A stretch of 55,863 nucleotides of DNA from Girardia tigrina (taxonomy: Eukaryota): assembly GCA_001938485.1 (NCBI GenBank), contig MQRK01242463.1, positions 1 through 55,863 of the forward strand, written 5' to 3'. A model generated the notes under the pieces. It did no database searches and was not told where the DNA came from. It saw only the letters and a list, made by a program, of their open reading frames with translations. The position numbers and the translations under genes were made by a program. Shown here one piece after another: positions 1-30,780 of the stretch (positions are counted from its first letter, which is position 1; each line of letters opens with the position of its first letter).

Positions 1-935
1 TACTTAATTTTAATGCCTCGATTTCAGCACTTTAAAAATCTGTACGTACCACTGTAAAATAATGCTTATTACAAAGGTTACACCATCTCTTAGAAAATCC
101 AAAAAACTAAGTTATACACATAATATATTGTTTTTAATTAAAATTGTAAAAAAACATTTTTTATATAAAATTCTGGAAAAGTCAAGTGTTTGTTTAACTA
201 CAGAAGCATTTTTTCAAAACTTATTGAACAATATAATTGACGCAAAGTTGAAGAAATTATACTTTTTAAATGAAAATTTCATTTCGAAGACTGCGCAAAA
301 CCGACCGAATTTTTTAAAATATTTATTTTAATTTTAATTTTTTAATTTTAATTTATTTAAATTCATTTAAATGAATTTTGTAAACTTTCACCCAAAAATT
401 TCTATTGCCTTAGAATCTTTTTAACCATAGCAGTAAGCGTAGCAAGGACGGAGAGAGAGATTTTAGCGTTCTCGAACGAATTAAATTTTTTTTGAGATTA
501 ACAATGATCCAGGATCGTGTAATTGGTCTACCGATTTTAAATATTAATTGGGATATAGCGAAAATTTCGGATTATTCAAATTAATAAATTCTTTCGCAGC
601 TCTAAGGGCTCAAAAAGTGATTTTGTAATTTTTATTCATTAGTTTTAGTTTTCGTATTTTGTTATTTTGATTCATATTTTTATTTATGTATTTTGGTAAA
701 TAAATTTTTGATCAATAAAGACATACTATTTTTATTTTTTTCTGAACATAGGGGTCACATAAATTACCTGACCTTGGCCTCCAAGAGGCTCTTACAGTCT
801 CTGCTGGTGATTATCTCTTGCGGTGAACTACTTTGTTGATGTCATATATATTTAATTGGTTTTATCATATTCATATAGTTTTTTTCAAATACAAATACAA
901 AATGGTGCTACTTTTTATGCTCTATTTGCATTTAG

Positions 936-1181
936 ATAATCCGATTGTATTTTATCCTGATCTTCATTTTTATATAAGAATGCATCACATTGAAATTAAC
1001 TGTCTTCTTGATCCCGATACAAAAGTATTAGATCTCATGATGTCGTGGTGGATGAATATGAACATATCCAAATCGCGTTTTATAACCGTTTACGACCATA
1101 AGATAATTATTTATAAATCCATTCTTCAAAGTTTTATCAATATTAGCTGCCAATTAGTATGGGATAAAAATGAGGAAGAAC
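936..1181 (+). CDS. IgSF gene exon: Ig-like domain 1 (DNPIVFYP...IEINC...MSW...INISCQL)
   Basis: Acceptor ttgcatttag ends at 935, donor c|gtagaa at 1182; 246 nt, phase 1-1; lies inside ORF 833..1216. Confidence 0.7.
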
Positions 1182-3027
1182 GTAGAAATATATTTTTTCA
1201 GATTTTAATTTTTTAATTTTTATTTTAGATATCATTATTTTTCAAATTAAGAAAACAGGTATATTTACGTTTTGTCATACGTTTCGTTTATATATATAGT
1301 CAATCCTGTTCAATATGAACACCAGTATTCCAACTTTTTCAAGTGTTCATATTAAGAAATAATATGAACACTTATTAACACAACTATATTAATAAAAAAT
1401 AAGAGGAATATGTATTTACACAAGAATAGTAAAGATATGTTTATTACAATATTTATTAAAATTTCAATATTTTTTGTGTATAATAAAGTCTGTAATTTTC
1501 AATTGTCTGGATGCCTTTTCTCCTTGAATTTCATCAATCAAGTCCCATATTTTGTTCATCTTATCAGGAAAATGGTCCTGAAAATATTTTTCAAGTTTTT
1601 TTGCATACTTATATGCTTCAAATCCTTTTATTACTGTATCTTCTTCTACATCTTCAACAGAATTATCATTTACTTCTTCTTTTTCAGAACATTCATTCTC
1701 ATAATTTTCCACTAGATAATATAAGATATTTTCATCATTTTTTGGATTAGCCTAGAAACATGGAAAATCACCATGTTCCGTAATCCCTTGTTTAACACAT
1801 GCATTTTCGAAAGACATGGTACAACAATTACAGATTGTCTCTAGTTTTACATTATTCCATGATTTCAAAATCCAAACCATTAATTCATACAAATCAATTT
1901 TCATGCACCATGTTCTCTTGTGTAACATTATTATCTAAATGGAAATTCAGTGACAAGCTCAAAGTATTCTTATAATAGTCTTTAAAATTTTTATATTATA
2001 CTTTGATCAAGAGGTTGTATAAGAGATTATTTGTTTGGTGGGAAAAAATAATTCGATATAGCTTAATTCAGTCTTTTGGATGAATGGGTGCGTTATCTAA
2101 CAAAAATAAAATTATTCAGCTGACATCTTACTGTTCAAATCTTTTAACAATTCTGGAAAAATTGTTAACGTCATCCAATATACATAAATGTTTTTATTCA
2201 ATGTTCATAATAGATAGATTATAAATGAATATTTAAACAATAATTTGATTAATAATATTTTTTTATATTTTACACTAATTACATTGTTTTATATTGTTCA
2301 TTGTTCAAAATAAACAGTATTCGTATTATCAAATGAACTTTACAATTAAATCAATATGGTTGTTGCAAATTTTCAACTTAGACTTTCCTATTAAAGTATG
2401 TTCATATGGAACAGGTTTAACGATATATATACAGTCAGGTGCAAAAGTTTGTCAACGCTTGTTGTTAAATTGTCTTTTGCACCCAACTGCAATTATATTG
2501 ACAAAAGCACACCAAAATACAAACATTATAATAAGACACAAATTGTGACGGATTAACCATTTGATGATGGTTTGCAAGTGCTGAGACAGCCTACTGTGAA
2601 GTTGCACTGCTGTAACATGAGGGGTTCTTTCAGCCTCCTGTAATTTTTTTTCTGTCATCTCTTTGACTGGTTGATCTTGGACGACCAGATCGAAATCTTG
2701 AACATATGGAACCAATGTCCCTTTTTCTCTGAACAGTCTGACACACAACTCCAAGAGAAACATGAAGAGTTGTAGTTATTTGTCGATAAGAAACGTCGTG
2801 CTTCTGCAATACCAAATCTGCTGCACGCTGTTCTGTTGTTAGTTCCTTTCCGTGGACAGGCATGACTCTAAAATAAATAATGACAAATTATAACTTGAAA
2901 AGTAATAAAAATAAAATATGCATTTAATAATTTAAATGGTTTATGTATACTTAACAGGAATACACAAACATGCAGTGCAACAACAAAAAGATGTATAGAA
3001 ACAAGCGTTCACAAACTTTTGAACCTG

Positions 3028-3076
<49 letters not shown>

Positions 3077-6000
3077 ATGTGTGTCTATATACATTTGAGG
3101 CGACTTNNNNNNNNNNNNNNNNNNNNNNNNNNNNNNNNNNNNNNNNNNNNNNNNNNNNNNNNNNNNNNNNACATACATATTTATACCAAAAAATTATTTT
3201 TACAATGTAAAATGAAAAATATCGCATTTATTTTTCAATGGTATTTTCAATGCGATTACTATTATTAGGTATATAACTTAGTTTTTTGGATTTTCTAAGA
3301 GATGGTGTAACCTTTGTAATAAGCATTATTTTACAGTAGTACAGATTTTTAAAGTGCTGTAAGTCGACGAGAGATACATGTACTTAGGATCATTTATGGG
3401 TCGCATTGTCGCATACACTCCTGAGAAAATATTCTCTGACGTCCTCGCTGACTTAAACTATATAAATATGCCCCTCCTCCTTCCTTGGCAAAAACTGCAT
3501 TCATACATGTTATTTGACCTCTCTAAATTTATATTTAACTTTAGAAACTTGTTCATTCCCTTTGGCAAATTAATAGAGTCTGTTACAGGATGGGATATCA
3601 ACATTAGGAGATTTTTCAAGGATGTACTAGGAGTACCTCACAACACATCAACACCCTACATCTATGTATCTCATTCAAATGGAGGAGTTGTAATGACTTC
3701 TGCCATAGATGAATACATAATCCAGTCCATCAGTCACTCCTTTTACATGTTAAACTCCACTGACCCAAATATTTCAGAAGCTGCCAATGTCACAATTAGA
3801 CACTCTTTACCAGACAGATCTGTTGGTTTTGATGATGTACTAAGCTGGCTAAACACTTACAATAAAGAACGTAACTCGTGGTGGAATAAAATACATCAGG
3901 CCATCCATATATTTAAAGATACTCATGGAGTTATAATTCAATTTCTTTATAGCTACCCTAGAGTAGTGATATTAATCTCACAGAATGTTGGTGGCAGAGT
4001 GACTCTTGAGACTTTTAATTCTAACAATAAAGATAAATTAACTAAAATCTTAAGGAATTGTGTGCCAAACTCCGATTTGGAGCCGTGGGATAAGCAGAAC
4101 AGTGCTGGTAAATATTCAGTCGCTCTATTACAATCTGCCTAATCTACCTCACCAATATATAAAGATCGACTCACAATTTCTGAATGCAATTTATTCATCA
4201 TTCACGCTCATAAACTATTCCTGTTAAGTGCAGACCGAGTGTAATCATTCGTATTCCTTGTTATCGAGGTTGCTCTAAAGATGAGACTCTTGTTCACGTG
4301 TTGGTGGGCTGTAATTTTTTGAGTAACTTCCGGAATGCACGACACAACGCTGTGCTTGATATCTTCGCTGCTGAAATTAAAGCACACTCGGGTGGTGTAA
4401 TACATTTGAATAAAACCTGTCGGTATGTTCCTTCCACGAAGCATGTTGATTTGCAAATCTTCTTTGAATCAATAAATACTTTGTTTCTTCATACCATCAA
4501 ATGCCCCTAATCTAGAGAATGCTGATTTAAAGAATGTGAACAAATAATTCCCATTAATGTTACAAATTAAAGATATATGTGGGTAAAAAGTCGTCTTTGA
4601 TACAATCATTGTTGGTGCTCTTGGTTCATGGTGGACCCACAATGAGGACATCCTGAACGACCTTAATTTTTCATTTAGAAAGAAAGTCATAGCCAATGCC
4701 TGCGATGAGTCCAACATTCGCTGCTCCTGTCGTCAATGATAAGCCTTTCAGGATCCGCGGGAAAAGCAGAACACACATAGATATGAAGATGTTACGCACG
4801 ATCCAAATGCTGGCTTCGAAGTCCTTCAAGGAGGACTTCTTTTCGGTGAGTACGACTCTGACTCTGTGTTTGGGTTATGGTAGCTGTGTTCTTAACATTC
4901 TGAGGATTTATATTAGTATTGGGATCAAGGTTTAAAATGTTTGTGTTAGGGACAATGACCCAACTTAAGTGTGTTCACATGAGTTTAACTGCTATGTATG
5001 GCAGAGGTGAGAGCTTTTTATGTATGATGGATCCCATGTTCTATAACTCAGTTTGTTTGACATCACAATTGATGTCCTTTGTGTTTCCGCTTTGAACATA
5101 GAAGCAGATGAATGCTTGCAATTTTGGGTCCACGAGCGCTGGTCTGCTTTCCTGCTCCGCAAAGTTCCAATGCTGGTAATTAGGAGCCCTTCTCTCTTTT
5201 TCTTCTTTGCCCCCTTCATCTTCCACTCAGAAAAGGTGCTGCAAAGAACTAAAACTAAATTTTAACAAATCACTGTGTTTACAATAAACATTTTGCAAAA
5301 AAAAATTTTATGATAAATGTATAAAGTGAGTAAAAATGATTTCTAAAATTGATGTTATAAACACTATAAATGTTGACTGGATATGTTCATCATTGAATTT
5401 TCCATTTGCAACTTCTTCGAGTGTAAGTTTTCTAAAACTTTGACTTTTTTTAATTTAATTTTTCATAAATACTTTTATAAATTTTTTTTATAAATTCTTT
5501 TAAATTGCATTATTAATGTTTCAACTAAAAACATTTCATGATCTTCAGCTGACTGAATTTGTTTTTAAAACTTTTAATACAAACCTAAATGAAATCAGAT
5601 GAGCAAAAATCTTAGGACTACCCTAAAAATCTGTTTTACCGTTACTATAATATAATCATTATACTATTTGTTCGAAGATTAATTATATCAATCTTGATTT
5701 TTGAACTGATTTAGATTGTTTTTCGTTGTAGTAATCATTGTTGATCCCTTTGAGTTATATTTTTATAATAAATCGAATTATTTACTTAATGAAAGCATTT
5801 CGTGCAATATTTTGTCACACATACTCACTTCATATCCACATTTATACCAAATTGAATGGCAAAGTGAAGAACCTTTAAAGTTTACCTCAAGGATCATAAA
5901 TAATATCCACCATTTAATAATTGACAAAAGAAATGTTCCAGGCAGTTACAATATTACATGTGCTTTAATATATTATGATTACAAAAACATCGTTTTCAGA

Positions 6001-9000
6001 AATCGACTTTCAGTTACAAAATTGTTTTTCATTACAGGTAAATTTTTTTAATTAAAATTCAATAGAATTCTATTAAAAATATTTCAATTTATTAAAAGTT
6101 TTTTATAAATAAATTTTAATTTATTTTAACCTTCTGTGACGTGCAACGTAATAATGCGTTTTTTAACCTAGGCCGTTCGGCCGTGGGTACACCCAGCATG
6201 CGGGCGGAACTCAACTTGGCCAACAGAATTTTTTAAATTTTTTATTGTTTCTTTTCATGGTTAGAATTCTAACCCAATTTTAATAACAATAATGTTAATT
6301 AATAATATTTTTTAATTATTTTTTTAGATTTAATTATTTAAATTAATTTTAAAATATTGCTATTTACACATATAACTATCTATTAATAAAAGCAAGTAGC
6401 AATAAGTCAGCTATTTTGTCAGTCAACTCTGAGTCTTGAAATTGAACAGAAAGAATATGATCATTGGATTAAGGAAACGGTTGATTCTTGAACATTAAAA
6501 GAGATGGATGTCAATATATATATATATGCAGCAATAACAAATACAATATAAATAATGCTTTTTGTGAGCGCCGATCCCGGCCAGTAAATTAACGTCCGAC
6601 ATCAATAAAATAGCTTCGCTTTAAAAAAGAATAATTCGATGAAAACGGTTCCAAACTTTATTTAAAAAAAATTCTACACTATTCGAATATTTAAACAAAA
6701 ATATTTTTGTTCATATATATTTTTTAGAACCCGTTCATTAATTTTTTTAAGTTTTCGAACTAAAGATTTTAGTATATAAATATTAATGTTGTAAATATTG
6801 TTATTGATTTTATGTATTAAATATTTATGGATTATTTTACTTCAAATTTTTTTTATTTTTTTTATAGATATTTTTTTATTATTACAAAACGAAATTTTAA
6901 AATAATTCTATTTTAAATATCTCACATCCCCCCTTTTTAAGAATTTTAATTGCTCCACATTTCGTGTCACACCTTTCCATCTATCGTTTTCCATTCTATA
7001 ACATCTATCGTGTACTTTCTGTTATCCGATACGGTCCTTCATATTTATGATCTTCTTTATTCCTAACTTCCTTTTTTACCCATACTTCTTCTCCAATTTC
7101 CAACTTTCTCCTTGTGTCCCATGTATCTAGCTTACATGTCTTTTCTCTCACTTACGTATTATTTCCCCTCACCCTTCCTGTGTTCTATCATTCCATTGAA
7201 ACCTGTCTATTCACTTACCGAACACTATTTCTGCCGGCCTCTTCCCCGTCGTCTTCTGAACAGTACTTTTCAAGATGTATTCTATTTCTGGTAAAATATC
7301 CGCGGGTAAAATACCCTTTCTATCTCTTAGAGTCGCCATCCAGTATTCTCTTATTGTCCGAAACTGTCGTTTGATAATTCCGTTTGTTTTATGATGGCAG
7401 TGGCTCGAGAATAACAATTTGATTTTGAGTCTCTCCATCATTTCTCGAATCACTTGTGATTCAAAGCTTTTTCCACAATCTACATGAATTTCCTTTGGTG
7501 AACCGAATTTGAGTATCAATTATTCTGTATTATTTTTTGTATTGTGTTCTCGTCCTGCTTCCTTATAGCCGTGAGTGATATATATTTACTGAATTGGTCA
7601 ATTATGGTTATGATGTATCGTTCTCGGTGAAATTTTTCTTTCGATATGTCGATATATATTTTCTCAAATATTTCATCTGCCTTCATATGTATCCGATCTT
7701 CTTTTGTTTTCTGCGTCACTGTTTTGGTTCGGGGATAAGCTTCACAGTTATTGATTGTTTCTTGGATCAATCTCTTCAAATCCTTCATATCATATGTTTC
7801 CCACATATGTTACCATGTGTTCTCTCCTCCTGTGTGACGTATTCCTTGGTGAATTTCTTTGATTATTGCCATACGTTTCCTTGCTGTTATCCATTTCTTC
7901 CCCATCATGGTGTAAATTTCTCCATTTTTCATGATAAATTTATCCGTCCGCTGAATCTCTATGTCTTTCCGTATCTCTCGTCGTCTGGTGTTGCCATGCT
8001 TGCCAGTAGCCTTGTTTTTGGTTTCTCTTTCTTTGCGTCTTCATGACTCGTCATACATTGTGGACATGTCTCACACATTCTCCTTGACATCACATCTGCA
8101 TTTGTATGCAATGTCCCTTTTCGGAATTGTAAATCAATGTCCAAACTGGAAAAATAGTTTATCTACGTTTGAAATTGTGCGGTGATTGGTTTTTTGGTCG
8201 TTATCATGAAGGTTATCACTTTATGGTCTGTCCTCAGAGTGAATCTCCTCCATACAAATAATGATTGAAGTGTTGGCAAAAGTAATATACAGTAGGAGAC
8301 AAATTATTACATACACCTCTATTTTTAATGTTCTTCTTTTATAAATATTTTATTAAAATGAATATCTTTCTGATATTTTTATACAATATTCTTTATGAAC
8401 ATGAACATATTTTCGCAAAATTTCGTATATATATGTTCATTTTTTAAAAAGGTATAACACTTTGAACATAAAATATGATGGACAAATTATTAAATACACA
8501 AAGACGCTGTTACACAATAAAGGTAGGAAAAGCCAAATAATACACAAAACACATATATTTAAGGTACAAAACTTTAGCTTAATGTTTCTAATATCTTATA
8601 TTACCTCCTTTAGCTTTAATTACTGCATCAATCCGTCGTGGCATGCTTTCAATAACGTTCTTTATTGTCACAGTAAGGCCGACATCTTGAAACCAAACCC
8701 GATTAAGTTCGGCGACCAGACCCTCTTTGGTAGTTATGGTTTGTCGTGATAGACGGTCTTTGACCAAAGCCCATATATTTTCGATGGGATTCAAGTCAGG
8801 GCTGTTACGCGGCCAAGGCAACATCGGAACCTTTTGCGTTTCTAAATATGTCTTCACAATCTTTGCTGTATGGCAGGGTGCCCCATCCTGCATGAATATG
8901 AAATCTTTACTTCTTGGAAACCATTTCTTTATTTGAGGAATTGCTGAATTACGTATGACATCTAAATATTTTTCCGAATTCATAATGTCATCACAGACGT

Positions 9001-11837: not shown

Positions 11838-11886
<49 letters not shown>

Positions 11887-11936
11887 NNNNNNNNNNNNNN
11901 NNNNNNNNNNNNNNNNNNNNNNNNNNNNNNNNNNNN

Positions 11937-11986
<50 letters not shown>

Positions 11987-14900: not shown

Positions 14901-17900
14901 AGTATTTCATCATTTCTGCAAACAACGATTCGAAAGTTTTTTAAGCGGCCGTCGTACGCAGTTCTTAAACGTAACGGTTGGTTATTGGAAATGTATATTT
15001 TTATTAAATGTTATTTAAATTTTCCTGTTCCTAATTTCTTATATTTTGAAATAAAATAAGCTATAATAATGAAAATATACCCTTTGGCCCACGGAGATAT
15101 ACATATCATATATACATATGGCAGCTAACGCGTTAAATTAAACAAGTTAAATTTGAGTTTTGACTTAATGTTATATATCAATAAACAGCAACTGTCGAAA
15201 TGTCCTAAAATAATATAATATACAGTAAAACCTCTCTATAAGTAGTTATTTGTGACCGAGAAAACTACCTTTCAATAAGAAAAGTTGCTTATAGAGAAGG
15301 AAGGAATATAAATTAAATTAATAAATACAATAAAACCTCTCTATTAGGAGTTATTTTGGACCGAAATAATAAAAAACTTTATTCCTTATAGTGAATTACA
15401 TCTTATAAAGAGGGAACTTTCTAGAAAGGTTTTACTGTAAATATTATTTTCAAACTAAACATTATTTTTGTAGAGTACCAAATATGAAATTTTTTCTTTA
15501 TATAGGAGTTTCTATTTTTCAAATTATACCTGATTTGGATGTAGTATTGTGCTATGATGTAATTTGTTGTGATGTTACTGCAGTTGTGGAGGTTCAAATT
15601 ACCTTAATGGTTTATAATACATCAATTACAGGAATATACAATGTCTGCTATGTATTACCACCTGTGATTCGTAGTTACTTAGGGTTTGTATCATGTAATA
15701 TAACGTACAATACAATCGAAGAACATAAACATAAGCCAGTTGTTTATTTAAGTAAGTGTGGAATTTTCTTTTATTTTAGTTTTTTTCATTTATGCACAAT
15801 TGAAGCAAAATCTTGTTGTAAATTTTAAGAATTTTTGTTATAAAATATTTTTCGTCCTTGTGATCGTACTGCTTGTTACGATGTTGTTTCTGTTTATATA
15901 ATAACATGAATTTTACATCATTCATATCTGGGATCAGTATACCTTTGCCCAAGGGAGGACAAAATATTTTTATTGATAGACATGTTTAATACTTACTTAC
16001 TATCAGGGTGTTGTATCTCAGCAGATGCTTTTTCGGTTTCTTCACCAAGAATAGCTGACCACCAACAAATTCCCGGAGCACGTGCCCACACGATTGGTCC
16101 CATCTGTAGTTCCGTCGATATGTCATCACATTTCTCTGACTGAACTTCAAATAACTTGATGATTTTAAATTGTTCATCGGTGATTATCGTAATCTTTAAA
16201 CATTGAAACAATTTCACGGCCGAATTAAACAGTTCGACAAATTGATAAATAACATTCGCATTCAAATCGACATCGATCTCATCCATATTGCAGAAAATCG
16301 ATTTTTTGACAAAATGGCCGTCTTTAATATCGAAATGTACAATTACGGTTGGAGAGTCTCTTTTGATCTTCTCGATTTGGTTGACTACTTGATGAGCTCT
16401 ACTCAATTTCAAACTGCATATTTGCACGCCCATATCGATTCTGTTGCTGAAATTTATGACCTTTGGAGCCTGATTCTGCGTGTTATCATTAGAAACAGAT
16501 TGAACTGGTTTTTTATTATCTCTCGGTTTACTGGAATTATTATCTTTATCATCGTCACTTTTAAAATTAATATTTTTTATTTTAATCGGTCGATTTATGA
16601 AGTCGTTATCGTGACTGAAGTACACTTGTAATGAGTCTCGATTGAATACTCGACTCAAAACAGTCTAGTTAAAATCGTCGTGTTTCGCCCGATATTCACA
16701 TCGGGATTAAACTTTAAGACACTTTATTTTGTGGTCAAAGCTTTCAATTTGCCTACACGCTTTTTTTCGAAACAAAAACTGACTGTTTAAATTACTCACA
16801 TCAATTGTGTCTAAATCGAGCACAGTTATGTTTTTGAAGTGCCACATTACGAGATTTTTTAGCAATTCATATCCGATACCGCCCGCTCCAACGACCAAAA
16901 CATTACTTCTTTCAACAGCATTCATTGTAATTTTTTATTTTTTATAAACATTGTTTTTCAATTGTGATCATTTTTGATTAGCAATATTTTCATTTATTTA
17001 AATTTAAATGAGACAGATCGATTCATAAAGCTGCAATCATCACAAAACCATATGAACGTGATGATCATATACATTTATTTATATATATACTTATATATAT
17101 TAAATTATTTAATTCAATTAAATCTTATTTAATTTTTTATTTCTTTTTTATTTTAATTACTTATTTAATTATTTAATTTTATTAGTTTAATTATTTTTTT
17201 TATTTAAATTACAAATAAAGGGTTTAAGGCTATCGCAGCGCGACCACAGGATCCGCGTGAATATAATGCCTACTTTAGTTACAATTTAAAACGTAATGTA
17301 TGAATTAATGGTACATACAAATAGAAGGTATTCATGTTGATCCCACCGTTTCTTCGTTTTATTTTGGAAGAAATTAAACAAAACTACAAATTTATAGAAC
17401 AGGTTCAACGTTTTGTATATAAATGAAGATTGCAATAAATGGCATATAAATGTTTTTTAAACGTATAAATTGTCCAATAGGCCTTAAGAGACAGTATGAA
17501 AATAAATAGTAACATGAAAATTGTACTCACGTTGACATAATTAAACATTACACAATAACAATCACACAACAGTGTCTAGAAAAGTGAACAATTTTATAAA
17601 AATTGCTGAAAGTAACCACCAGCATGTTCCTGAAACAATGAGTTTTGGCGGATAAAAGAATGATACACTCTCCGTATTATGGCAACATCAGTAGCCTTTA
17701 AAAGGTTGGATAATCGAGCCTTCAACTCTACAATAGTAACAGGACAGGGTGCTGATGAAGATTGTTTCGTATTGACCCTCATAACCAAAAATCCATGACA
17801 GGCAAGTGCGGACTTCTTGGAGGCAATAGACCTGTACTTCCTGGGCCAGTCCTACGATTTGGCAATTCATGATTTAGATCCTGTCTAACAACATTAGAAA

Positions 17901-20900: not shown

Positions 20901-20925
20901 NNNNNNNNNNNNNNNNNNNNNNNNN

Positions 20926-20962
<37 letters not shown>

Positions 20963-23900
20963 AAACACTTTCTGTGAATTTTCATTCAAAATTAATGAAC
21001 AAGACGATTTTGAGTTTAAAAAAAATGTTATAACAATAGGCGATTTTAATTTAACTCGGAAAGACTGTTAACTGATGCTTGAAGAGAAAGTGATGTGGTT
21101 ATAAATATGAATCATATTAACAAAGTAAAGATTGATTCAATTTCGAAATTCCGAAACACCCAGATTAAAGTTTTAATTAATATTGTATACATTTTATATT
21201 TCAAATACGTTTTGATTAACTTTTTACTTAACAGGTTGAGTGTGATACGACCCACCAGTGGGTCGTTGCTGATTTCCATCTGCAGTGAAACGATCCACGG
21301 GCGGGTAGTTTATAAAAATAATACGGAATATTTAAAAGAACCCTCAAAGTTGGCATTATTGCCATTTTGAAATCTCACACTCGGCTGCGAACAGATCCAC
21401 TGGTGGATCGCATTCCACTCAACGTGTTAATCATTGTTTTATACGAGTTAGTCAAGTGATGGTATAAGGGAAAATTCTGGGTAGACAGTAATAAATATTA
21501 CATTTTATATATTTGAACTGTTATCTTAGTTAGAGTTCCGGTAAAATATAGTAATACATTTTAGTAAGAGGAATATGTTAAAAAAATTTAAATAATTTTG
21601 AAAAACCATAAAAATTTTCACTAATATAAATTTAGTATTTAAAGGAATTACTTATAATATACCAGAATTTCCCGTAAGTTGTTCAACTAAATCAATTTAT
21701 TGAATAGAGAAAATGATATTTTAAACTGATTTAAAAAGAAAAAACGAAGTAAAAAAGAAACTTCAAGTGCATAACAAAAATACTACTATTACCCTGTATA
21801 GGAGAAAAGGTTTAGTTCTTTTACCTGTTAACGATTCAGATTCAGGAATCACTTGAAGCTTATTGTGTATTGAATGACTATTTGAATTGAGCTTTGTTCT
21901 TAGTTGTGTTTCATTAAAATAAATTATTTTAATGAATAGTTTGTGTTCACTTTACATATACTTATTGTTGGAAGAACCTTTTTGAAATTGACAGTCAGAT
22001 AATTGATAAAGTGCAATAAAGATACAATGCGTTTCATTTAACAACAGCAAAATGTTATAACGTGCACATTTAATTACAGTAAAATCAATCATAATTTTGC
22101 TTTATGATTGCTTTAATGTACTGTTATAAAATATTGCAAAAGATTTATTGAATGTTATTCAATTTTATGATATAATTTTATGTACTGTCGATATGTAAAA
22201 AGGTGAATAAAAAGAAGCCAGTTATCTAAATATCTTTTATAACTAAATAAGTGATAGATAAAAAGGCATTCATTAATAGTACTATTTTTTAGTATTTATT
22301 AAATACTATTTAATAACAAAATACAATAACGTTTTCAGACGATCCGGAAAACTTATATATTTTCCCAAGTACTCCCAAATTAGGAAGCCAAATAATATGT
22401 TTTCCCTATGAAACGATTTTCGATTACAAAATCTTCAAAGATATCAAATTAGATTTTGAATGGAGTGTTCTTCAAAGTCCTAAACTGGATCCAGAATTGT
22501 TCGGGGATACAATTAATTTAACGTTTTACTCAACTGAAGAAAATGTTTTAATTTTATTAGAGGAAATTTCAATATTTGGGATATACATCTTACGGTGCCT
22601 TTGTCGAATAACATTAAGGAATTTAACATTTGAGTTGGATAAAAATGCTACTTACTTCATCACAGGTTTTTAATTATATTTTGTATTCCTAAATGAACTA
22701 AGTACATAATTCTTAAAGATTTTCGAGATGATTTTTCCTCGCTTCAACTCAGACGCCGCGGATCTTTATCATTGTTTAACCTAATTTTAGTCTTATTTAT
22801 TATTAGTCATTTAATAATTTGTCTTACTATTGCATTTAACCAGACTATGGAACGTAATATGAAAACATGTGTGGAAAAATATTTGTTCCAAACGGGATTT
22901 TATAAATCATTTAAAGATAAAACGGTAATTATATGTTCTTATATATAAAATTTAATTAATAAAGTTTAATTGTATGAGAGATACATATACTCTTTATAGC
23001 ACCTATAAGACGTACAAATAAAAATGGTACGTCTACAATAAAATGAGAATAAGAAACAGCATCGAAATTATAAAATTACATATAAACTATTAAAAACATT
23101 GAAGGAACAACAAGATAAAATAACAATAAATTCTTATTATCTTAAGACTATTAATTGGATAGTTTAACATGTTGTTTCTAATAAAATAAATAAATAAAAG
23201 TTAAGGTAGTTCTCCTGAGAAACTTATGCCAATCCAAAGCATTTGGTTAACACAAAAATAACTAGTAAATCAAAACAAAATGATATCCTTTCTTTATTCT
23301 AGCAGAACTCTATTTGGTCAAGATAATTTTTTGTTATCTTTTGTAGAAGGGAAAATTACAATTGCATTTATTAATATCATTAATATTTATTAATTCATTA
23401 ATACTTTTTTATCTTTACTTTGCGTAATATAAACTACTTATAATTTATAAGTAGATCTTTTGCAATTAATTTTGTTCAGGAACTCCGATGTGACCGTTTT
23501 TTCCAAATTCTGAGACCTTAAAAAAGTTTTTTTTGATCAAATTATCACATAATCATTTATTGTCATCAAAAATGAGTAAAAGTGCAAAGTTTGAAGAAAT
23601 TTTATTGAGTAACAAGGGTACGCCGACTTTACCGCGGACGACTTTACCGCGGCGACTTTACCGCGGGCGACTTTACCGCGGAAAATTTACAACAAAATTG
23701 TCAAAAAGTAAACAATGTCATCTAAAATATATATAAAAAATTTTAATTATGTAATGATAAAACAAGGAATCATAATAATTTGAAAACATAAATGGATAGA
23801 AAATTTCAGATGGACATGACATTTAATTATTCTTTTTAATAAAAAAAATAAACAAACAACATACGAAAAATTAGTAAATTCCTAATTTAAAAAAAATCAA

Positions 23901-25055
23901 ATAACCCAAAAAATGTGATGTGTAAATTGAAGAAAGATACAAAAACATTAAACTGTTTCTTTTATTTTTTTCCAAATTGATTGGTTCAGATGAAAAAAAC
24001 AGCCTTTAACAGTAGCATTACAAAATACAGTGGAAACAGTGTTCATTGCTCCTTTTTCAAAATCCATCATAATAGTTTGTAGATTTAAATTTGGTTGTTC
24101 TCTTAAAAGCTCTTCAAACATACGAGTGTAATTTAATTGAGTTTTATTGGTCATCAATGCATAAACAAGAGGGAATACTTTGTTTGATTTTAAAGCATGT
24201 ATAGTATAAACTTGGTAAAATAATCGAGGGACGACAGAGAATGATCCATCCATAAACCAATTTTCACAAGAAGCCATCAGATTTATGTTTGCAGTTGTAC
24301 TGAAGAGCATTATCCGGTTGGCATCATTAGATCCAGAATCGAGTATCAAAAAAGATTCATTTCTAGTTGTAAACNNNNNNNNNNNNNNNNNNNNNNNNNN
24401 NNNNNNNNGATTTGGATTTGGCCAAGGAGCATTCTCTTGTTTTCTTTTTCGTTGAATTGTACGTTGACTAGAGTGATAACTTGGAAGAAATATTGCAACG
24501 TCAAGTGGAATCCCAGTCTTAGATTTCTGAATAATTTGCCTCGGGACCTCTACTGTCTGCGATGCACGAGTTGCAACCACCTGAGCAATGTGCCTAGCGA
24601 TACTTTACCTGGCTCAGGAGCATGATTATGCTCAGAAGGGTGACCTAAAATGTTGTTGTTTGAAGTACGAATTTTTCCTTTACATTTATGTTGTTCATAA
24701 GCAACACAGCGCCAGAATTTTCCATCTAGAGATTTTAAATCATAATCAAAGCGATAAGAATAACCTGCATACGCAACAATCGGATTTCCAGATTTTGAAG
24801 TAAAGAATTGAAGATTCATGCTGAAAAAACAGTGGGAGAAAAATTTTAAGAAATTTATAATATTTTAAGATATATTTTTAAACGTAAGTCGATAATTTTA
24901 TTATAATTATTATGTTTTAATAATTCGGTAATTATTCGGTAATAATGGCAAAAAATATCTTAATTAAAAATCTGAAAAAATCCGCTGTAAAGTCACCCGC
25001 GGTAAAGTCGCCTCACCAGTAACAAGCTTTCAAAAATAGGTTTCTAAATTTCCGT

Positions 25056-25102
<47 letters not shown>

Positions 25103-25670
25103 AAAAATCATTTCTAAATCTTACAAAATTCAAAGTATGTTCAGCAATAAATCTCGTACTCCTTTGAGTTCATGTTCCAATCTCATGCATCAATTTTCGT
25201 GTAATGGGTGCAACGCCACATACATTGGAGAGACATTTCGTCATGTCTGTAAACGGATTCAGGAGCATGGACGATATTTAATAAATATAATACTTAACCA
25301 ATCAGACTGCATTGATAAAATGAATGACATATTAGGTACAGATAAAGTCAAATATTATTTTGTTTGCTATCGTAGACTATTTGATAACTTTTTATTCAAG
25401 TTTTGTTAATTTTACTTTTAATCTTTGTAGAAACTTGATTTGCCATTGAAAACTTTTTATTTTCGGGATAATTACATGAAACGAATCGATTATTTCAACT
25501 GTTACAGAATGATAGAAATGACCATTAATAGAAGTAAATCCAAACAAAGTTTAAGTTCTAAGCCAACCGAATTCAAATTTGGTCTAATCAAATTAAGAGA
25601 GAAAACATATAGTCCGAAATATAAAGTAAGACTTAGAAAAGTTTTTAATTTTAACTTAAATTTAATCGTT

Positions 25671-25705
<35 letters not shown>

Positions 25706-28500
25706 TCCACCCTCGTTTCCGGGACATTCTTTATGGTGGGGCACCTTGATTTGTGGGGAAATTTTGGTTTTTGGGGCAAGTTTTAAGAATCACACTATTA
25801 CATATTATTTATATTGTGTTTTTATTCCAAAAGTACAATTATGTTTCGTTTTTTGGGGCATATTTTTTAACCTAAAAATGATATTAAATCTTGGTCTGAA
25901 ATAATTATCAAAATTTCCCCAAATTTAAAATATTACAAGCTTTTTTTTAAAAAATAATGGATAAACTTTTATTATTCTATTAATTAACTGTTTATTTTTT
26001 TAACTTGTGCTTTCATTAAACATTATGCCAAATAACAAAAGTTCAAATCGTTATTAATTGAATATTATTACAAAAATATTTCTAACTTGGTGATAAGAAA
26101 TTTATTCAAAAAGTTAATTTTAAAGTAACTAAAGACAAAGAGGGCCGAATTTTATTATCGGATTGTTGTTGGAAGTGTGTTGTAATTTATAAAGAAAAAA
26201 CATTCAGTTTGGAAACACAAGACAAAAAACACAACTTCCATAACACAACGATTGGATATGGGTTTGATAAAGGCATTCAAGGATCATTACAATAATTCTC
26301 TTGTTGATTTTTTGGCAACTGAAGAACCGCTGGAGGATACCGGAACAGCTGAAATTTGTGAAAAAGTTCGTTATGATAAACTAAAGCTGGGATGGGAAAA
26401 ACTTAAAGAATTGGAAAATTTCATTGAATAAAAAAAAGAATACATCAAAAAGAATACATCAAGTTTAGAATGCAATTTAATAATTTTTTAAAGAAGGAAT
26501 TTAAATTTGAGAAAACAATAACTGATTATTTTAAAAAATTGGAATAAATTTTATTTAGTTTTTCGATGTTTTTTAATTTTTTGGGTGTTTTTTGGTTTTG
26601 GGGGCAAAATTTGATATTTTTTGCCCAAAACCGAGGGTGGATTGTATATATATATATATATATATATNNNNNNNNNNNNNNNNNNNNNNNNNNNNNNNNN
26701 NNNNNNNNNNNNNNNNNATATATATTATAAAAAAATAATTAAAAATCCATTCAAATTAGAAAATTAAGAGAATGGTGAAACTTTGCTTTAGAATAAAATA
26801 AAACACTTTATTGAGGAAAACATTCGTGTATCATGTTAAAATAAATATTTTTTTACATATTTTATAGTACCTATCATATTTCATGGTGACTCACCTTGAT
26901 TTTGATCACTTTTGAGTCGTGTTAATAACAATTATGACTGTTGTTTTTTTAATATTTTTAGATCGCCAATTTAGAGCTTTGAATATTGAACGAAGAATTT
27001 TAATACAAAAGCACTTGCTATTGAGATTGTAGCGCTTAAGGTGAAGGTACGGAATCAGAGAAAATTGCAAAGAATTATTTAAGCATTCAGCCAAAAAACC
27101 GTGTTTTGTTGATAAGAAAAGTATATTTCTAAAAAGGAATAGTTATGATTCCAAATTTATTCATATCCTATATCATAAATATATGACATATTAGGTGCAA
27201 CGAACTGTGGATGATGATGCAACGTCTTAAGGAGTTGAAATCTGATACGCCTGCACTAAACTCTTTAAATTATGCTTGCAAGGGTCTGTAACAAATATTT
27301 GGGATAACCACATCTTGCTGATGAAGATACACTGTCAGTGTTGATATATCTGCGAATGGTGTCCACCACTGCTACTTTCGGATGTCCTACTAACCTTATC
27401 GTTTTTCACTTGGATTTTCCTCTAATAAAAATCCCACAATGACGCCCCTTTCCAAATCATTCAGGTCGTAATGCTTCATATACAGGGAAGTTACATAATA
27501 TGCATATAATATATCACAATTCGATTGATTATTAATAGCAGAACAATGAAAAAAGACTTAATAAGAGGATAAATATCACTAGTTGCTGAGCATCTAGATA
27601 GGTGAATTTTTAACACATAATCTCCTTGTGTTATATTAGAAAATATCATAATTAAGTGAGCTCCAGATGACATTCTGTTCCCGAAAATGAAGTGCGTTAC
27701 TAGTGGTGTATGTAATGTATTCTTATTGCAACGCCGTGTAAAATGAATAATTATAAACATTTTATTACAAATGATACTGGCTTACATCTTCATGATAAAA
27801 TATATCAGGCAGAGTGAAATAGGAAATAAAAGTATTCATTATTATTAAATTCATTGGTAGTCGTGGTTTATGAAGAATAAATTTTAACGGAAATTAATAG
27901 AAATTTTGTACAAATGGTCAAGAAAAATACATAAATACCAATTTAACCCCTTTACCGTGGAAAAAAATTTTTTTTGGAAACTGTGTAATTGTTTTCTTTC
28001 ATTATTTGATTTGTTATGTTGTCCTGACAAAATAAAACATCATTGTGAGTGAAAATGAATTGCCATGTAGAATTTATGAAGTAAAGTAATTATGAATTTT
28101 TTCATATGACCAGTTAACTCGTGACACACGGTAAAGGAGTTAAAACGATGATAATTAGTGAAAGCTCTGTTGAGAATTGTCCCGAAGACAATTCAAATTG
28201 TGTTATAAATAAAAGTCTTGAAAAATATATTTGTACTCTTAATAATATATATATATGAATTAGTATTTTTCTTTTTATTTATAGTTGCAGTTATATTTTC
28301 AGAATATGAAGGTGTCATCTAGCTCTGGAAATGTCAATTTAATTGATAATATTTTTGAAGGTTCTGATGATGAAGTAGCGAAAAAGTATAGAATGACAAA
28401 AAAGAGTATCACAATTCAAATTAAGCCGCCTCTATCAGACAAAACTGATTTGACATCTTCGACTAGTACTAAAGTTTCCGAAAATCTACATATATTATAA
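936..28500 (+). CDS. Multi-exon gene (5' end not resolved): single-pass membrane protein with four divergent Ig-like domains; exons 936-1181, 1229-1258, 5732-6037, 15506-15751, 22339-22665, 22719-22924, 25431-25625, 28285-28500
   Basis: All junctions are GT-AG with matching phases (1-1 for the Ig exons, then 0). The spliced frame has no stop for about 589 codons. Domains show Ig-like C...W...C spacing (domain 3 lacks the Trp) and 10 N-x-S/T sequons, then a hydrophobic TM segment [24 protein letters not shown] and a cytoplasmic tail. Confidence 0.8.
1229..1258 (+). CDS. IgSF gene 30-nt micro-exon ([10 protein letters not shown]), probable last strand of Ig domain 1
   Basis: Follows a 47-nt intron (1182-1228) ending tattttag; donor acag|gtatat; phase 1-1. 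Confidence 0.55.
1297..2423 (-). mobile_element. Decayed pogo/Tigger-type DNA transposon
   Basis: Imperfect TIRs (tagtcaatcctgttcaatatgaac / reverse of gttcatatggaacaggtttaacga) in TA context; minus-strand DDE_1 remnants [22 protein letters not shown] and C-terminal QLKITDF. Confidence 0.75.
2432..3031 (-). mobile_element. Internally deleted Tc1-like element (600 bp)
   Basis: About 32-bp TIRs CAGTCAGGTGCAAAAGTTTGTCAACGCTTGTT with TA flanks; paired-like HTH N-terminus with GRPR motif (ORF 2630..2863); no catalytic domain. Confidence 0.85.
3032..3090. repeat. (TA)n/(TG)n microsatellite next to an assembly gap
   Basis: Visible directly; similar (TA)n tracts at ~11840-11983, 20928-20958, 25058-25098, 25674-25702 and 26645-26667. 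Confidence 0.95.
3365..4790 (+). mobile_element. 5'-truncated RLE non-LTR retrotransposon (NeSL/Utopia-like), decayed
   Basis: RT C-terminal region (ORF 3378..4142), CCHC-type remnant [10 protein letters not shown]...RNARHNAVL, restriction-like endonuclease motifs KHVDLQI, IKCP and IIVGALGSW; stops and frameshifts. Confidence 0.8.
5732..6037 (+). CDS. IgSF gene exon: Ig-like domain 2 (LLNESISC...IEW...PGSYNITC)
   Basis: Acceptor ttttcgttgtag, donor acag|gtaaat; 306 nt, phase 1-1; lies inside ORF 5716..6051. Confidence 0.8.
6375..6585 (+). mobile_element. Possible small non-autonomous Helitron
   Basis: 5' ctatctattaataaaagc resembles Helitron 5' ends; 3' short GC hairpin ccgatcccgg followed by ccagt (CTAG variant). 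Degenerate. Confidence 0.3.
6927..13170 (-). mobile_element. Decayed Ty3/Gypsy LTR retrotransposon internal region (gag-PR-RT-RH-IN)
   Basis: Gag CCHC knuckle [14 protein letters not shown], protease FLDTGA, RT MPFG and YLDD, RNase H FTLRTDHK, integrase IIDQFSK and IHVDCG. A polypurine tract aaaaagggggga is followed by TGTGAG (3' LTR start at 6926). Many stops and frameshifts; no 5' LTR seen. Confidence 0.93.
8290..9945 (-). mobile_element. Full-length Tc1 (DD34E) element with ~240-bp TIRs, nested in the Gypsy RNase H region
   Basis: Ends CAGTAGGAGACAAATTATTAC on both sides with TA duplication; transposase 9573->8588 (frameshifted) with FSDES and QDGAPCH-34-E (SPDLNPIE); removing it restores Gypsy LLAIYYFCQHF. 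Confidence 0.95.
14000..14410 (+). pseudogene. Degenerate multi-C2H2 zinc-finger gene fragment
   Basis: [10 protein letters not shown]...FESH and [22 protein letters not shown] plus two more degraded fingers; stop at 14261-14263 and frameshifts. Confidence 0.65.
14423..14515 (+). pseudogene. EEF2: Elongation factor 2 (eEF2) G-domain fragment, in frame with the ZnF fragment
   Basis: [31 protein letters not shown] aligns by eye to eEF2 KSTLTDSLVxKAGIIAxxRAGxxRFTDTRKD. Confidence 0.7.
15223..15437. mobile_element. Tigger/pogo-type MITE
   Basis: TIR CAGTAAAACCT ... AGGTTTTACTG with TA flanks; a second left-end copy inside at ~15328. Confidence 0.75.
15506..15751 (+). CDS. IgSF gene exon: Ig-like domain 3 (DVICCDVT...[10 protein letters not shown])
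   Basis: Acceptor tttttctttatatag, donor tta a|gtaagt; 246 nt, phase 1-1; lies inside ORF 15484..15828. Confidence 0.72.
16001..16677 (-). pseudogene. Chimeric open frame downstream of the UBA2 fragment: unassigned domain plus degenerate PWWP N-terminus
   Basis: ORF 15993..16658 has no visible UBA2 similarity; it ends [21 protein letters not shown] (PWWP-like) followed by a GTAAGT donor at 16000. Confidence 0.55.
16678..16925 (-). pseudogene. UBA2: SUMO-activating enzyme subunit 2 (UBA2/SAE2) N-terminal fragment
   Basis: [18 protein letters not shown]...[20 protein letters not shown], continuing after a frameshift as [22 protein letters not shown] and AKHD; truncated, with substitutions in conserved positions. 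Confidence 0.85.
17560..18290 (-). mobile_element. Decayed DD41D (rosa/Visitor-type) Tc1/mariner transposase
   Basis: FSDDA, then QQDG...[11 protein letters not shown] with exactly 41 residues between the 2nd and 3rd Asp; stops and frameshifts; boundaries approximate. Confidence 0.75.
18590..20200 (+). mobile_element. Penelope-like element (RT + GIY-YIG endonuclease), decayed
   Basis: [41 protein letters not shown]; endonuclease [25 protein letters not shown]; several stops. Confidence 0.93.
20158..20197 (+). ncRNA. Degenerate minimal hammerhead-ribozyme-like motif at the PLE 3' end
   Basis: (C>A)TGAAGA-T-GACGG-ttgat-CCGTC-GAAA-TAT; perfect stem II; located where PLE hammerheads are known to occur. 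Confidence 0.6.
20471..20756 (-). mobile_element. Helitron 3' terminus and adjacent non-autonomous element (5' end in or near the gap)
   Basis: Minus strand reads ACCCGTCA-TA-TGACGGGT hairpin, then tattta, CTAG|T: the canonical Helitron 3' end. Confidence 0.75.
21232..21426. mobile_element. piggyBac-type MITE (195 bp)
   Basis: TTAA on both flanks; ~30-bp imperfect TIRs CA(G/C)GTTGAGTG...CGA(C/T)CCACCAGTGG. Confidence 0.8.
22339..22665 (+). CDS. IgSF gene exon: Ig-like domain 4 (GSQIIC...DFEW...GIYILRC)
   Basis: Acceptor gttttcag, donor acag|gttttt; 327 nt open, phase 1-1; absent from the ORF track. Confidence 0.82.
22719..22924 (+). CDS. IgSF gene exon: transmembrane segment and juxtamembrane region
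   Basis: Follows a 53-nt intron (22666-22718) with a ctaa branch-like site; encodes a 24-aa hydrophobic stretch; donor acg|gtaatt, phase 0. Confidence 0.8.
23617..25017 (-). mobile_element. Mutator-like element (MULE) with FLYWCH + MULE transposase, frameshifted and 3'-deleted
   Basis: 9-bp TSD AGTAACAAG (23608-23616 and 25018-25026); TIRs GGT..G.CGACTTTACCGCGG with tandem subrepeats; FLYWCH-like YSY...FWRC....C.G...H.H; WFMDGSF, IMMDFE and GCFFH. Confidence 0.93.
25098..25346 (+). mobile_element. Penelope-like fragment: GIY-YIG piece joined to a pre-RT piece
   Basis: [24 protein letters not shown] is closely similar to 19830-19965; it is followed by [16 protein letters not shown], which resembles the PLE pre-RT motif. 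Confidence 0.75.
25431..25625 (+). CDS. IgSF gene exon: cytoplasmic tail part 1
   Basis: Acceptor atctttgtag, donor aaa|gtaaga; 195 nt, phase 0-0; in frame with ORF 25440..25673. Confidence 0.65.
25703..26644 (+). mobile_element. Non-autonomous pogo/Tigger-type element inserted in (TA)n
   Basis: TIR CA(G/A)TCCACCCTCG.TT; remnant of a transposase C-terminus (KTITDYFKK). Confidence 0.75.
27200..27480 (-). mobile_element. Tc1 transposase N-terminal remnant
   Basis: [16 protein letters not shown]...[21 protein letters not shown] across a frameshift. Confidence 0.5.
27947..28139. mobile_element. piggyBac-type MITE (193 bp)
   Basis: TTAA|CCCCTTTACCGTG ... CACGGTAAAGGAG|TTAA. Confidence 0.8.
28285..28500 (+). 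CDS. IgSF gene terminal exon: Ser/Thr/Lys-rich cytoplasmic tail
   Basis: Polypyrimidine tract plus tag at 28284, phase 0, ends TAA at 28500; equals ORF 28285..28500. Confidence 0.6.
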   Translation: MQLYFQNMKVSSSSGNVNLIDNIFEGSDDEVAKKYRMTKKSITIQIKPPLSDKTDLTSSTSTKVSENLHIL

Positions 28501-30116: not shown

Positions 30117-30780
30117 GTGAGTCAATCACAAAAAAAAGTGTGTGAAGTTTAAATCAGTTTAAATCAATTTCAAAAACGGTGATTGTTGTTCAATAAAGTC
30201 TTCAAATAATTTTTCGTATATTTATTATCATGAAGACATGTGTAACATTGTCGAAAGCTTATGAGCAATATGAAAAATTTCCTCTCAAAAAAGATGAGGA
30301 AATAGTGTACATCTATGTCATGAAATTCCTGACGATGCTTTCTGAAGTTAAAAAGTTATTTAAAAGCGATAGAAAATACATTAACGTGATGTGCAATTCC
30401 GAGAAAGTCAATCAGGCATTTGAGAAAGTAGAAAAGTTAAAAGATAGTTTACAAGCGCGATATGAGCTCGATAAACAAAGAAAAATAAAAATGAAAAAGG
30501 AGCAGTGAAAGACTTCAATAATGTTGTGAAGGAATTCGTTAACGTGAAAGAATTCCACAAATGTATCAAACAGAATGAGAATGTATTGATTATTGATTCG
30601 CGATCGGAATCAGAATTTGCCGCGTGTCACATTTCTCACATACGAATTCTTAATAGCCCGCTGATTCGCTGAGTGTTTTAGAAGATGAATCGACAAACAT
30701 TTTTTCTTCTCCCAAAATATCGTGGAGACACGGCTTCCTGTCCAGTAAGGATGTCGATTTTCTAAAGCTTATTTTTTTGT
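30117..30780 (+). pseudogene. USP8: USP8-like N-terminal fragment (USP8 dimerisation/MIT-like + rhodanese domain), disrupted
   Basis: KKDEEIVYIYVMKFL...EKLKDSLQARYE matches the USP8 N-terminus; after a frameshift, VLIIDSRSESEFAACHI matches the rhodanese domain; no catalytic domain. Confidence 0.75.

What the first reader, a model, noticed from the sequence alone, without database searches (positions are those of the whole stretch)
936..28500. Hidden 27.5-kb gene for a divergent four-Ig-domain single-pass receptor or adhesion protein
Seen: eight exons scattered among TEs splice with GT-AG ends and matching phases into one stop-free frame of about 589 aa. Each extracellular module sits on a phase 1-1 exon, the Cys pairs are Ig-like, there are 10 N-glycosylation sequons, then a 24-aa TM segment and a ~180-aa tail. 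The ORF track misses three exons entirely and shows the others as unrelated ORFs. Established: one domain per phase 1-1 exon is the classic IgSF architecture. Inference: I recognise no known family, so this may be a lineage-specific, fast-evolving surface protein (adhesion, gamete or self/non-self recognition). The RRR just N-terminal of the TM segment is atypical for type I topology, and no canonical ITIM is evident.
Basis: partly seen in the sequence, partly recalled or inferred. Interest (0 to 1): 0.8.

Follow-up and report, generated by a model that had tools for sequence, protein, structure and literature searches.

The report
Probable orphan membrane glycoprotein gene
Five exons scattered among transposons probably form a real gene for a sugar-coated, single-pass membrane protein. 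Its "immunoglobulin" identity, its long tail and even its expression remain unproven, and no relative was found anywhere.

Summary
The window is AT-rich (30% GC), transposon-laden invertebrate-type DNA. It is not human. The first four have phase 1-1 AG/GT borders. No junction codon is a stop. The four module exons carry exactly 10 N-x-S/T sequons, and an RRR plus a 24-aa hydrophobic segment follows. All five assembly gaps lie in introns, at least 1.4 kb from any exon.

Open-frame length, GT-AG ends and matching phases are close to chance expectation here. The co-occurrence of features is not. Two exons rank first and second of 89 open stretches for sequon density. The membrane segment ranks first of 188. 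Three modules carry a Cys...Trp...Cys pattern.

The Ig assignment is untested in substance. No Pfam or PDB match appeared at E<=10, AlphaFold pLDDT was 37-40, and the modules are not demonstrably related to one another.

The 180-aa tail cannot be reproduced: 12,693 alternative exon chains fit equally well. A stop at 22946 followed by AATAAA gives a simpler 36-aa tail.

No homologue was found, but the databases also lack this organism.

Verdict: probably a real orphan gene (about 0.5), of modest interest.

The parts
902..935 (+). Possible start of the coding sequence. ATG at 902-904 (another at 839-841) is in frame with exon A and encodes MVLLFMLYLHL, a short and weak signal-peptide-like segment.
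   Evidence: direct reading. The h-region has only 8 residues and there are no small residues at -3/-1, so this is not established.
936..1181 (+). Exon A (module 1), phase 1-1, 81 full codons. Cys22, Trp37/38, Cys71. Two sequons. The donor AAC|gtagaa is weak.
   Evidence: The composition looks noncoding (G at codon position 1 = 0.17). Beta-periodicity z = 1.66.
1229..1258 (+). Speculative 30-nt mini-exon (ttattttag|A ... CAG|gtatat), phase 1-1. It would add [10 protein letters not shown], a G-strand-like end resembling the ...FFIT and ...YFIT ends of B and D. It would also replace the weak A donor as the site joined to B.
   Evidence: direct reading and phase arithmetic. Inference only.
5732..6037 (+). 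Exon B (module 2), phase 1-1, 101 codons. Cys24, Trp42, Cys76. Three sequons. Good splice sites.
   Evidence: Highest sequon density of 89 stop-free stretches. No relative in 1.84 billion representative proteins. G at position 1 = 0.14, noncoding-like.
15506..15751 (+). Exon C (module 3), phase 1-1, 81 codons. Five Cys, no Trp, two sequons. Consensus donor TAA|gtaagt. NAGNAG acceptor (15506 or 15509).
   Evidence: G at position 1 = 0.31, coding-like. This is the least Ig-like module.
22339..22665 (+). Exon D (module 4), phase 1-1, 108 codons. Cys20, Trp41, Cys86/88. Three sequons.
   Evidence: Second-highest sequon density of 89. Beta-periodicity z = 1.64.
22666..22718 (+). 53-nt intron between D and E (gtttttaa...cttaaag), about 19% GC. 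Retaining it would place a stop at 22671-22673.
   Evidence: direct reading.
22719..22945 (+). Exon E. RRR at 22751-22759. 24-aa hydrophobic segment at 22766-22837. It then either splices at 22924 (ACG|gtaatt, phase 0) or reads on to the stop at 22946-22948, which gives a 36-aa tail.
   Evidence: Most hydrophobic 19-mer of 188 stop-free stretches (Kyte-Doolittle 2.92).
22946..22963 (+). In-frame TAA (22946-22948) and AATAAA (22958-22963). This is a candidate true 3' end for a five-exon, roughly 462-aa model starting at ATG 902.
   Evidence: direct reading. AATAAA is common by chance in this composition, so this is only a hint.
28118..28255 (+). Linkage to the gene is not supported.
   Evidence: The composition is coding-like, but there is no phase-0 donor of any quality and no Pfam hit.
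28303..28500 (+). Terminal ORF claimed as the last exon (ttttcag|AATATG..., stop at 28498-28500). It is Ser/Thr/Asp/Lys-rich. It has its own ATG at 28306, so it could equally be a separate small ORF.
   Evidence: The connection to E is not unique.

Best explanation
A + strand protein-coding gene whose reproducible core is five exons: 936-1181, 5732-6037, 15506-15751, 22339-22665 and 22719-22924/22945. The exons are separated by 4.5, 9.5 and 6.6-kb introns filled with transposons, plus one 53-nt intron.

The gene encodes four 80-110-residue modules rich in N-glycosylation sequons, one per phase 1-1 exon. Three of the modules carry a Cys...Trp...Cys spacing. One strongly hydrophobic membrane-spanning helix and a cytoplasmic tail follow.

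The inferred mechanism is a type I surface glycoprotein that displays a stalk of disulphide-bonded beta-rich modules for binding (adhesion or recognition). This mechanism is inference only.

Shown: the exon borders, the phases, the sequon excess and the hydrophobic segment. Inferred: that the exons are spliced together, that the modules are Ig-like sandwiches, the topology, and any function.

The tail is more simply read as 36 residues ending at the stop at 22946, with AATAAA at 22958, than as 180 residues from three further exons 5.5 kb away.
For: Exons and phases. Junction codons L, G, N, D with no stop.

Ten sequons in 371 residues against 3.0 expected from residue shuffles (0 of 2000 shuffles reach 10), and against 0.76 per 100 aa in 16,656 aa of other open stretches. 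B and D rank first and second of 89 stretches for sequon density.

The hydrophobic segment ranks first of 188 and lies 53 nt after module D, on the same strand and in matching phase.

A, B and D each combine C-x(10-22)-W-x(20-48)-[YF]-x(1-4)-C with at least 2 sequons. Only 3 of 300 simulated windows have two such stretches on one strand, and a reversed decoy has one.

Exon GC is 27-31% against 19-29% in the 300-nt flanks. Beta-strand periodicity summed over the four modules gives z of about 1.95. The introns are filled with identifiable transposons and none of them overlaps an exon.
Against: There is no transcript evidence of any kind.

About 2.4 open stretches of this length are expected by chance per strand. 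The Cys-Trp-Cys pattern occurs in 5-8% of random stretches. AG/GT sites in every phase are plentiful.

Codon-position composition of A, B and E resembles noncoding stretches: G1 is 0.14-0.17 and T1 up to 0.34, against G1 0.26-0.31 and T1 0.17-0.21 in the homology-supported exons of the window.

No Pfam family matched at E<=10. There was no PDB match. There was no homologue by word search, by the full HMMER search or in metagenomes. AlphaFold confidence was 37-40.

The modules are not significantly alike. The best pair, A-B, has z = 3.5. However, A matches an unrelated LINE ORF piece at z = 3.95, and true leave-one-out profiles fail.

The donors of A (gtagaa) and D (gttttt) are poor. No convincing signal peptide was found. 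The neighbouring 'genes' in the window (a ThiF exon, a USP8 N-terminus) look like broken fragments, so this may be a gene-fragment graveyard.
Confidence: 0.5

Rival explanations
1. Not a gene. Chance open frames in AT-rich, transposon-laden intergenic DNA were stitched together through the many available AG and GT dinucleotides. The Ig-like look comes from T-rich and A-rich codons (Ile, Asn, Tyr, Phe, Leu, Cys) and from choosing the stretches that look best.
For: Chance expectation for open frames. The Cys-Trp-Cys pattern in random stretches. 12,693 alternative exon chains fit the tail. Codon-position composition of A, B and E is noncoding-like. No family, structure or homologue matched. Low-confidence folds. 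Module similarity is at noise level. 15% of open stretches carry a membrane-like hydrophobic segment.
Against: The features co-occur. The two stretches richest in sequons among 89 both carry the Cys-Trp-Cys pattern and lie on one strand. The single most hydrophobic segment of 188 sits 53 nt downstream of one of them, in compatible phase. The sequon excess survives residue shuffling.
Confidence: 0.3
2. One reading: eight exons, about 589 aa, four genuine Ig-superfamily domains, and a 180-aa cytoplasmic tail ending at 28500.
For: The first five exons and the sequon count match exactly. The stretches at 28118-28255 and 28303-28497 have coding-like codon-position composition.
Against: The tail chain is one of thousands, and its sites are poor. 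It crosses two assembly gaps and three transposon fragments. An in-frame stop plus AATAAA lie right after exon E. The Ig sequence criteria are not met. The terminal ORF has its own ATG.
Confidence: 0.08
3. A decaying relic: a former gene, or pieces of mobile-element coding sequence, that are no longer spliced or expressed. For example, exon A could be a remnant of a LINE ORF.
For: A resembles the LINE ORF piece at 44384-44653(-) (z = 3.95, P = 0.0025). A 105-bp inverted repeat pair (18-125 and 3263-3367) brackets exon A. Other host-gene pieces in the window are broken. The donors of A and D are weak.
Against: The A-LINE match covers only 23 residues, and the second LINE copy does not share it. 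Frames A-E are intact, with no stops or frameshifts. B, C, D and E have no mobile-element match.
Confidence: 0.12

Closest known systems
Immunoglobulin-superfamily single-pass cell-surface receptors and adhesion molecules (the CD4/CD2/nectin/hemolin type of layout)
   Same: A string of roughly 100-residue modules, one per phase 1-1 exon. A Cys-Cys pair 49-66 residues apart, with a Trp 15-21 residues after the first Cys, in three modules. Many N-glycan sequons. One membrane helix after the last module, then a cytoplasmic tail. That phase 1-1 modular exons are typical of IgSF ectodomains is established knowledge, recalled here and not tested.
   Different: No Ig-clan HMM matched, even weakly. 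There was no PDB Ig hit. The F-strand motif reads G-x-Y-x3-C rather than D-x-G-x-Y-x-C. Module C lacks the Trp. Module A has only 10 residues after the second Cys unless the speculative mini-exon is added. No signal peptide was shown. The basic cluster lies on the presumed outer side of the membrane helix.
Taxonomically restricted ('orphan') secreted or membrane glycoprotein genes of AT-rich invertebrate genomes
   Same: No detectable relatives, composition drifting toward what AT-rich DNA encodes, long transposon-filled introns, and a signal-plus-membrane glycoprotein layout.
   Different: Orphan status cannot be claimed here, because the collections searched do not hold this organism or close kin.

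Membership tests
Immunoglobulin superfamily (Pfam clan CL0011 Ig-like) | Significant sequence match of each module to an Ig-clan profile (V-set, I-set, C2-set, Ig_2/3, ig) | tested here: not met
   hmmscan of all candidate exons at E<=10 gave no Ig family. phmmer and a four-module profile against all PDB chains at E<=10 gave no Ig protein.
Immunoglobulin superfamily (Pfam clan CL0011 Ig-like) | Two-sheet Greek-key beta-sandwich fold | tested here: inconclusive
   AlphaFold2 on exon D alone gave pLDDT 37.5. On exon B with the four-module alignment it gave pLDDT 39.9. Both models show mixed helix and strand. No real alignment was available. A fold search was not run because models this poor give meaningless matches.
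Immunoglobulin superfamily (Pfam clan CL0011 Ig-like) | Conserved B-strand Cys, C-strand Trp and F-strand Cys with canonical spacing | tested here: inconclusive
   Present in A (C22, W37/38, C71), B (C24, W42, C76) and D (C20, W41, C86). Absent in C, which has no Trp. The pattern occurs in 5-8% of random open stretches.
Immunoglobulin superfamily (Pfam clan CL0011 Ig-like) | F-strand motif D-x-G-x-Y-x-C | tested here: not met
   B reads PGSYNITC, D reads FGIYILRC, C reads TGIYNVC and A reads QSFINISC. The Tyr-to-Cys spacing is 4, 4 and 3 in B, D and C rather than 2. A has Phe in place of Tyr, 5 residues before the Cys. The shared 16-mer scores at chance level.
Immunoglobulin superfamily (Pfam clan CL0011 Ig-like) | One domain per exon, flanked by phase 1 introns | tested here: met
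   A-D all have AG/GT borders in phase 1. This is weak evidence, because such sites are abundant in this composition.
Type I single-pass membrane glycoprotein | Cleavable N-terminal signal peptide | tested here: inconclusive
   Only a short hydrophobic start (MVLLFMLYLHL from ATG 902) lies in frame upstream of exon A. A 5' exon may lie outside the window.
Type I single-pass membrane glycoprotein | One hydrophobic membrane-spanning helix after the ectodomain, with the positive charge excess on the cytoplasmic side | tested here: inconclusive
   The helix is present and is the strongest in the window. The charge balance is ambiguous: the outer flank has RRR (net about +2) and the inner flank has net about +1.
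Type I single-pass membrane glycoprotein | N-glycosylation of the ectodomain | not testable with these tools
   A sequon excess is shown. Site occupancy needs biochemistry.

The most novel reading that the evidence does not exclude
A taxonomically restricted, fast-evolving surface receptor built of Ig-like modules so diverged that no profile recognises them. It would be a lineage-specific recognition molecule (self/non-self, gamete or host-parasite interface) in an AT-rich invertebrate, with no relative among 1.84 billion representative proteins.
Probability: 0.15. Interest if true: 0.6.

Novelty: new member of a known kind. Interest (0 to 1): 0.3.

Why it matters
If the gene is real, automatic annotation would miss it. 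Two of its exons give only 58-aa ORFs, and the exons are separated by up to 9.5 kb of transposons. Orphan surface glycoproteins of this layout are the usual raw material for species-specific recognition systems. As it stands, the finding mainly shows how little GT-AG ends and matching phases prove in 30%-GC DNA. Feature co-occurrence (sequons, membrane helix, Cys-Trp-Cys) is the better guide.

Tried and rejected
(1) Word searches with exons D and B found nothing. The full HMMER search of 1.84 billion representatives with exon B gave 0 hits at E<=0.001. These are not read as 'no relatives exist'. A control DnaJ gene of the window (Pfam 4e-16) also found nothing by word search. It has no exact record. 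None of 10 window ORFs is in the collection.

(2) Metagenome scans with D and C found nothing.

(3) A scan of bacterial and archaeal genomes with the Tc1 transposase, meant to trace the host through contaminating contigs, returned only distant IS630-like hits. The organism remains unidentified.

(4) Rfam and tRNA scans of the window found nothing.

(5) A leave-one-out profile test first appeared to recover B (E = 0.001) and C. That was an artefact of columns shaped by the left-out row. With re-alignment the ranks are 97, 561, 8 and 633 of 915, so the result was rejected.

(6) A shared E-F strand motif seen by eye in B, C and D scores at chance level in an unbiased 16-mer comparison, so it was rejected as evidence.

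(7) Exon A as a LINE remnant: a 23-residue match at z = 3.95 that the second LINE copy does not share. This is kept only as a minor rival.

(8) A search for UBA2 exons on the minus strand interleaved with exons A-C found none.

(9) No splice-site matrix could be derived from neighbouring genes, because no USP8 catalytic exons were found.

(10) The bacterial promoter scan is irrelevant here.

(11) A fold search was not run on models with pLDDT below 40.

Only single exons were used, by reference, and junction codons were checked one at a time.

Full report
CONTEXT. The window is 55,863 bp, 30% GC, with a CpG observed/expected ratio near 1 and six N runs. It carries a Tc1 element with 244-bp inverted ends nested in a gypsy-type LTR element. 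It also carries Penelope-like elements, a FLYWCH-MULE transposase, mariner copies and LINE fragments. This is invertebrate-type eukaryotic DNA and I do not take it for human. The organism could not be identified.

GAPS FIRST. All five gaps in the finding's span lie in proposed introns, at least 1.4 kb from any exon. No frame crosses a gap. Only the order and linkage of the exons depend on the scaffold. Two gaps sit inside single collinear transposons: 11887-11936 in the LTR element and 24375-24408 in the MULE. Gaps 11887-11936 and 26668-26717 have (TA)n on both flanks, and 20757-20925 has it on its right flank. This is consistent with local assembly failure rather than a false join. Gaps 3107-3170 and 20757-20925 cannot be tested. 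No gap was filled or looked up.

THE OBSERVATION. I rebuilt the model from stop-free stretches and AG/GT sites. Exons A 936-1181, B 5732-6037, C 15506-15751 and D 22339-22665 are all phase 1-1. E runs from 22719. Exon E carries RRR followed by a 24-aa hydrophobic segment at 22766-22837. D and E give only 58-aa ORFs.

The remaining three exons and the 180-aa tail could not be recovered. 12,693 phase-consistent GT-AG chains with two intermediate exons link E to the terminal ORF at 28303-28500. Only four have decent sites. Exon E also reads on to a TAA at 22946-22948, with AATAAA at 22958-22963. This gives a simpler five-exon model of about 462 aa if ATG 902 is the start.

MORE THAN CHANCE?
- About 2.4 open stretches of at least 100 codons are expected per strand.
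- The Cys...Trp...Cys pattern occurs in 5-8% of random stretches.
- 15% of open stretches have a membrane-like segment.
- The codon-position composition of A, B and E looks noncoding.

Three measures are not explained by chance:
- The sequon count is 10 against 3.0 expected (0 of 2000 shuffles reach it). B and D rank first and second of 89 stretches in the whole window.
- The hydrophobic segment is the strongest of 188 and sits 53 nt after D, in matching phase.
- A, B and D each combine the Cys-Trp-Cys pattern with at least 2 sequons on one strand. Only 1% of simulated windows show even two such stretches.

Beta-strand periodicity adds a little. I take this co-occurrence as the main reason to think the core is a real gene.

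WHAT IT IS. The Ig label is not confirmed. No Pfam hit appeared at E<=10 for any exon. No PDB hit appeared with single exons or with the four-module profile. AlphaFold confidence was 37.5 and 39.9, without a sandwich.

The modules cannot be shown to be paralogous. The A-B pair reaches z = 3.5 and C-D reaches P = 0.046. However, A matches an unrelated LINE piece at z = 3.95. True leave-one-out profiles fail. An unbiased 16-mer test is unremarkable.

By direct reading, B and D both end ...FFIT| and ...YFIT| at their donors. A speculative 30-nt phase 1-1 mini-exon at 1229-1258, with a good CAG|gtatat donor, would give module A a similar end. These points are hints, not tests.

HOMOLOGUES. The following all came back blank: word searches, the full HMMER search with exon B and the metagenome scans. 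A control DnaJ gene from the same window is equally invisible, and none of ten window ORFs is in the collection. 'Lineage-specific' therefore cannot be claimed.

STEPS LEFT OUT. The joined protein was never built, searched or folded, and junction codons were checked singly. Fold search was omitted because the models were too poor.

VERDICT. This is probably a real, unannotated gene for a single-pass membrane glycoprotein with four Cys-paired modules (confidence about 0.5). Chance stitching remains a serious rival (0.3). Ig membership is unproven, and the long tail is unsupported. Interest is modest until transcripts or orthologues are seen.

Noticed in passing
window 16710-16934 (-): An exon-like piece matches the ThiF/E1 N-terminus (PF00899, 1.4e-18; UBA2/SAE2-like). 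It lies on the opposite strand, inside the finding's 'intron 3'. The conserved NRQFLF motif reads NSQFLF. After a run of seven A the homology continues in another frame ([10 protein letters not shown]) and then hits a stop. No further UBA2-like exons were found downstream. It looks like a broken gene fragment or a homopolymer sequencing error.
   Followed up: partly
window 15996-16664 (-): A 223-codon open frame with coding-like composition (G at position 1 = 0.28) ends in a consensus donor (GAT A|gtaagtaagt). Its last residues resemble the start of a PWWP domain ([17 protein letters not shown]). No Pfam family matched. It lies only 245 nt from exon C, on the other strand.
   Followed up: partly
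window 30197-30669 (+): A USP8 dimerisation domain (1.5e-12) and a weak rhodanese start appear in two overlapping frames, which implies a frameshift near an A-rich run at 30475-30505. No ubiquitin-hydrolase catalytic exons were seen in the next 8 kb. This is possibly a truncated copy or a pseudogene.
   Followed up: partly
window 38989-39504 (+): An intronless 172-aa J-domain protein (DnaJ, 4.2e-16) with a coiled-coil-like tail. It was used here as a database control.
   Followed up: partly
window 53800-54500: A GC island (47-55% GC in a 30% GC window) carries 236-codon open frames on both strands. The minus frame matches tubulin-tyrosine-ligase (TTL), and a second TTL exon lies at 50589-50822 (-).
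   Followed up: partly
window 8287-9948: A complete-looking Tc1-type element with 244-bp terminal inverted repeats (95% identical) and HTH plus DDE_3 ORFs. It is inserted inside the minus-strand gypsy-type LTR element that spans about 7200-12800.
   Followed up: partly
window 18-125 and 3263-3367: A pair of inverted copies, about 105 bp long and 92% identical, brackets exon A, a degenerate Tc1-like HTH ORF (2633-2887, -) and gap 3107-3170. These could be the ends of a large DNA transposon or two copies of a miniature element.
   Followed up: partly
window 13916-14533 (+): A degenerate C2H2 zinc-finger open frame (zf-met, 6.8e-06) is interrupted by one stop.
   Followed up: partly
window 18580-20091 (+) and 25023-25406 (+): Two Penelope-like element pieces (reverse transcriptase plus a GIY-YIG-type motif, YIGET.RH.CKRIQEH) are 76% identical over 177 bp. 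Two LINE copies, 3363-4800 (+) and 44384-45477 (-), share ORF2-tail similarity.
   Followed up: partly
window 22751-22762: The RRRG before the membrane segment is encoded by AGA CGC CGC GGA. This is a GC-rich, CpG-containing patch (CCGCGG) that is unusual in this AT-rich exon.
   Followed up: no
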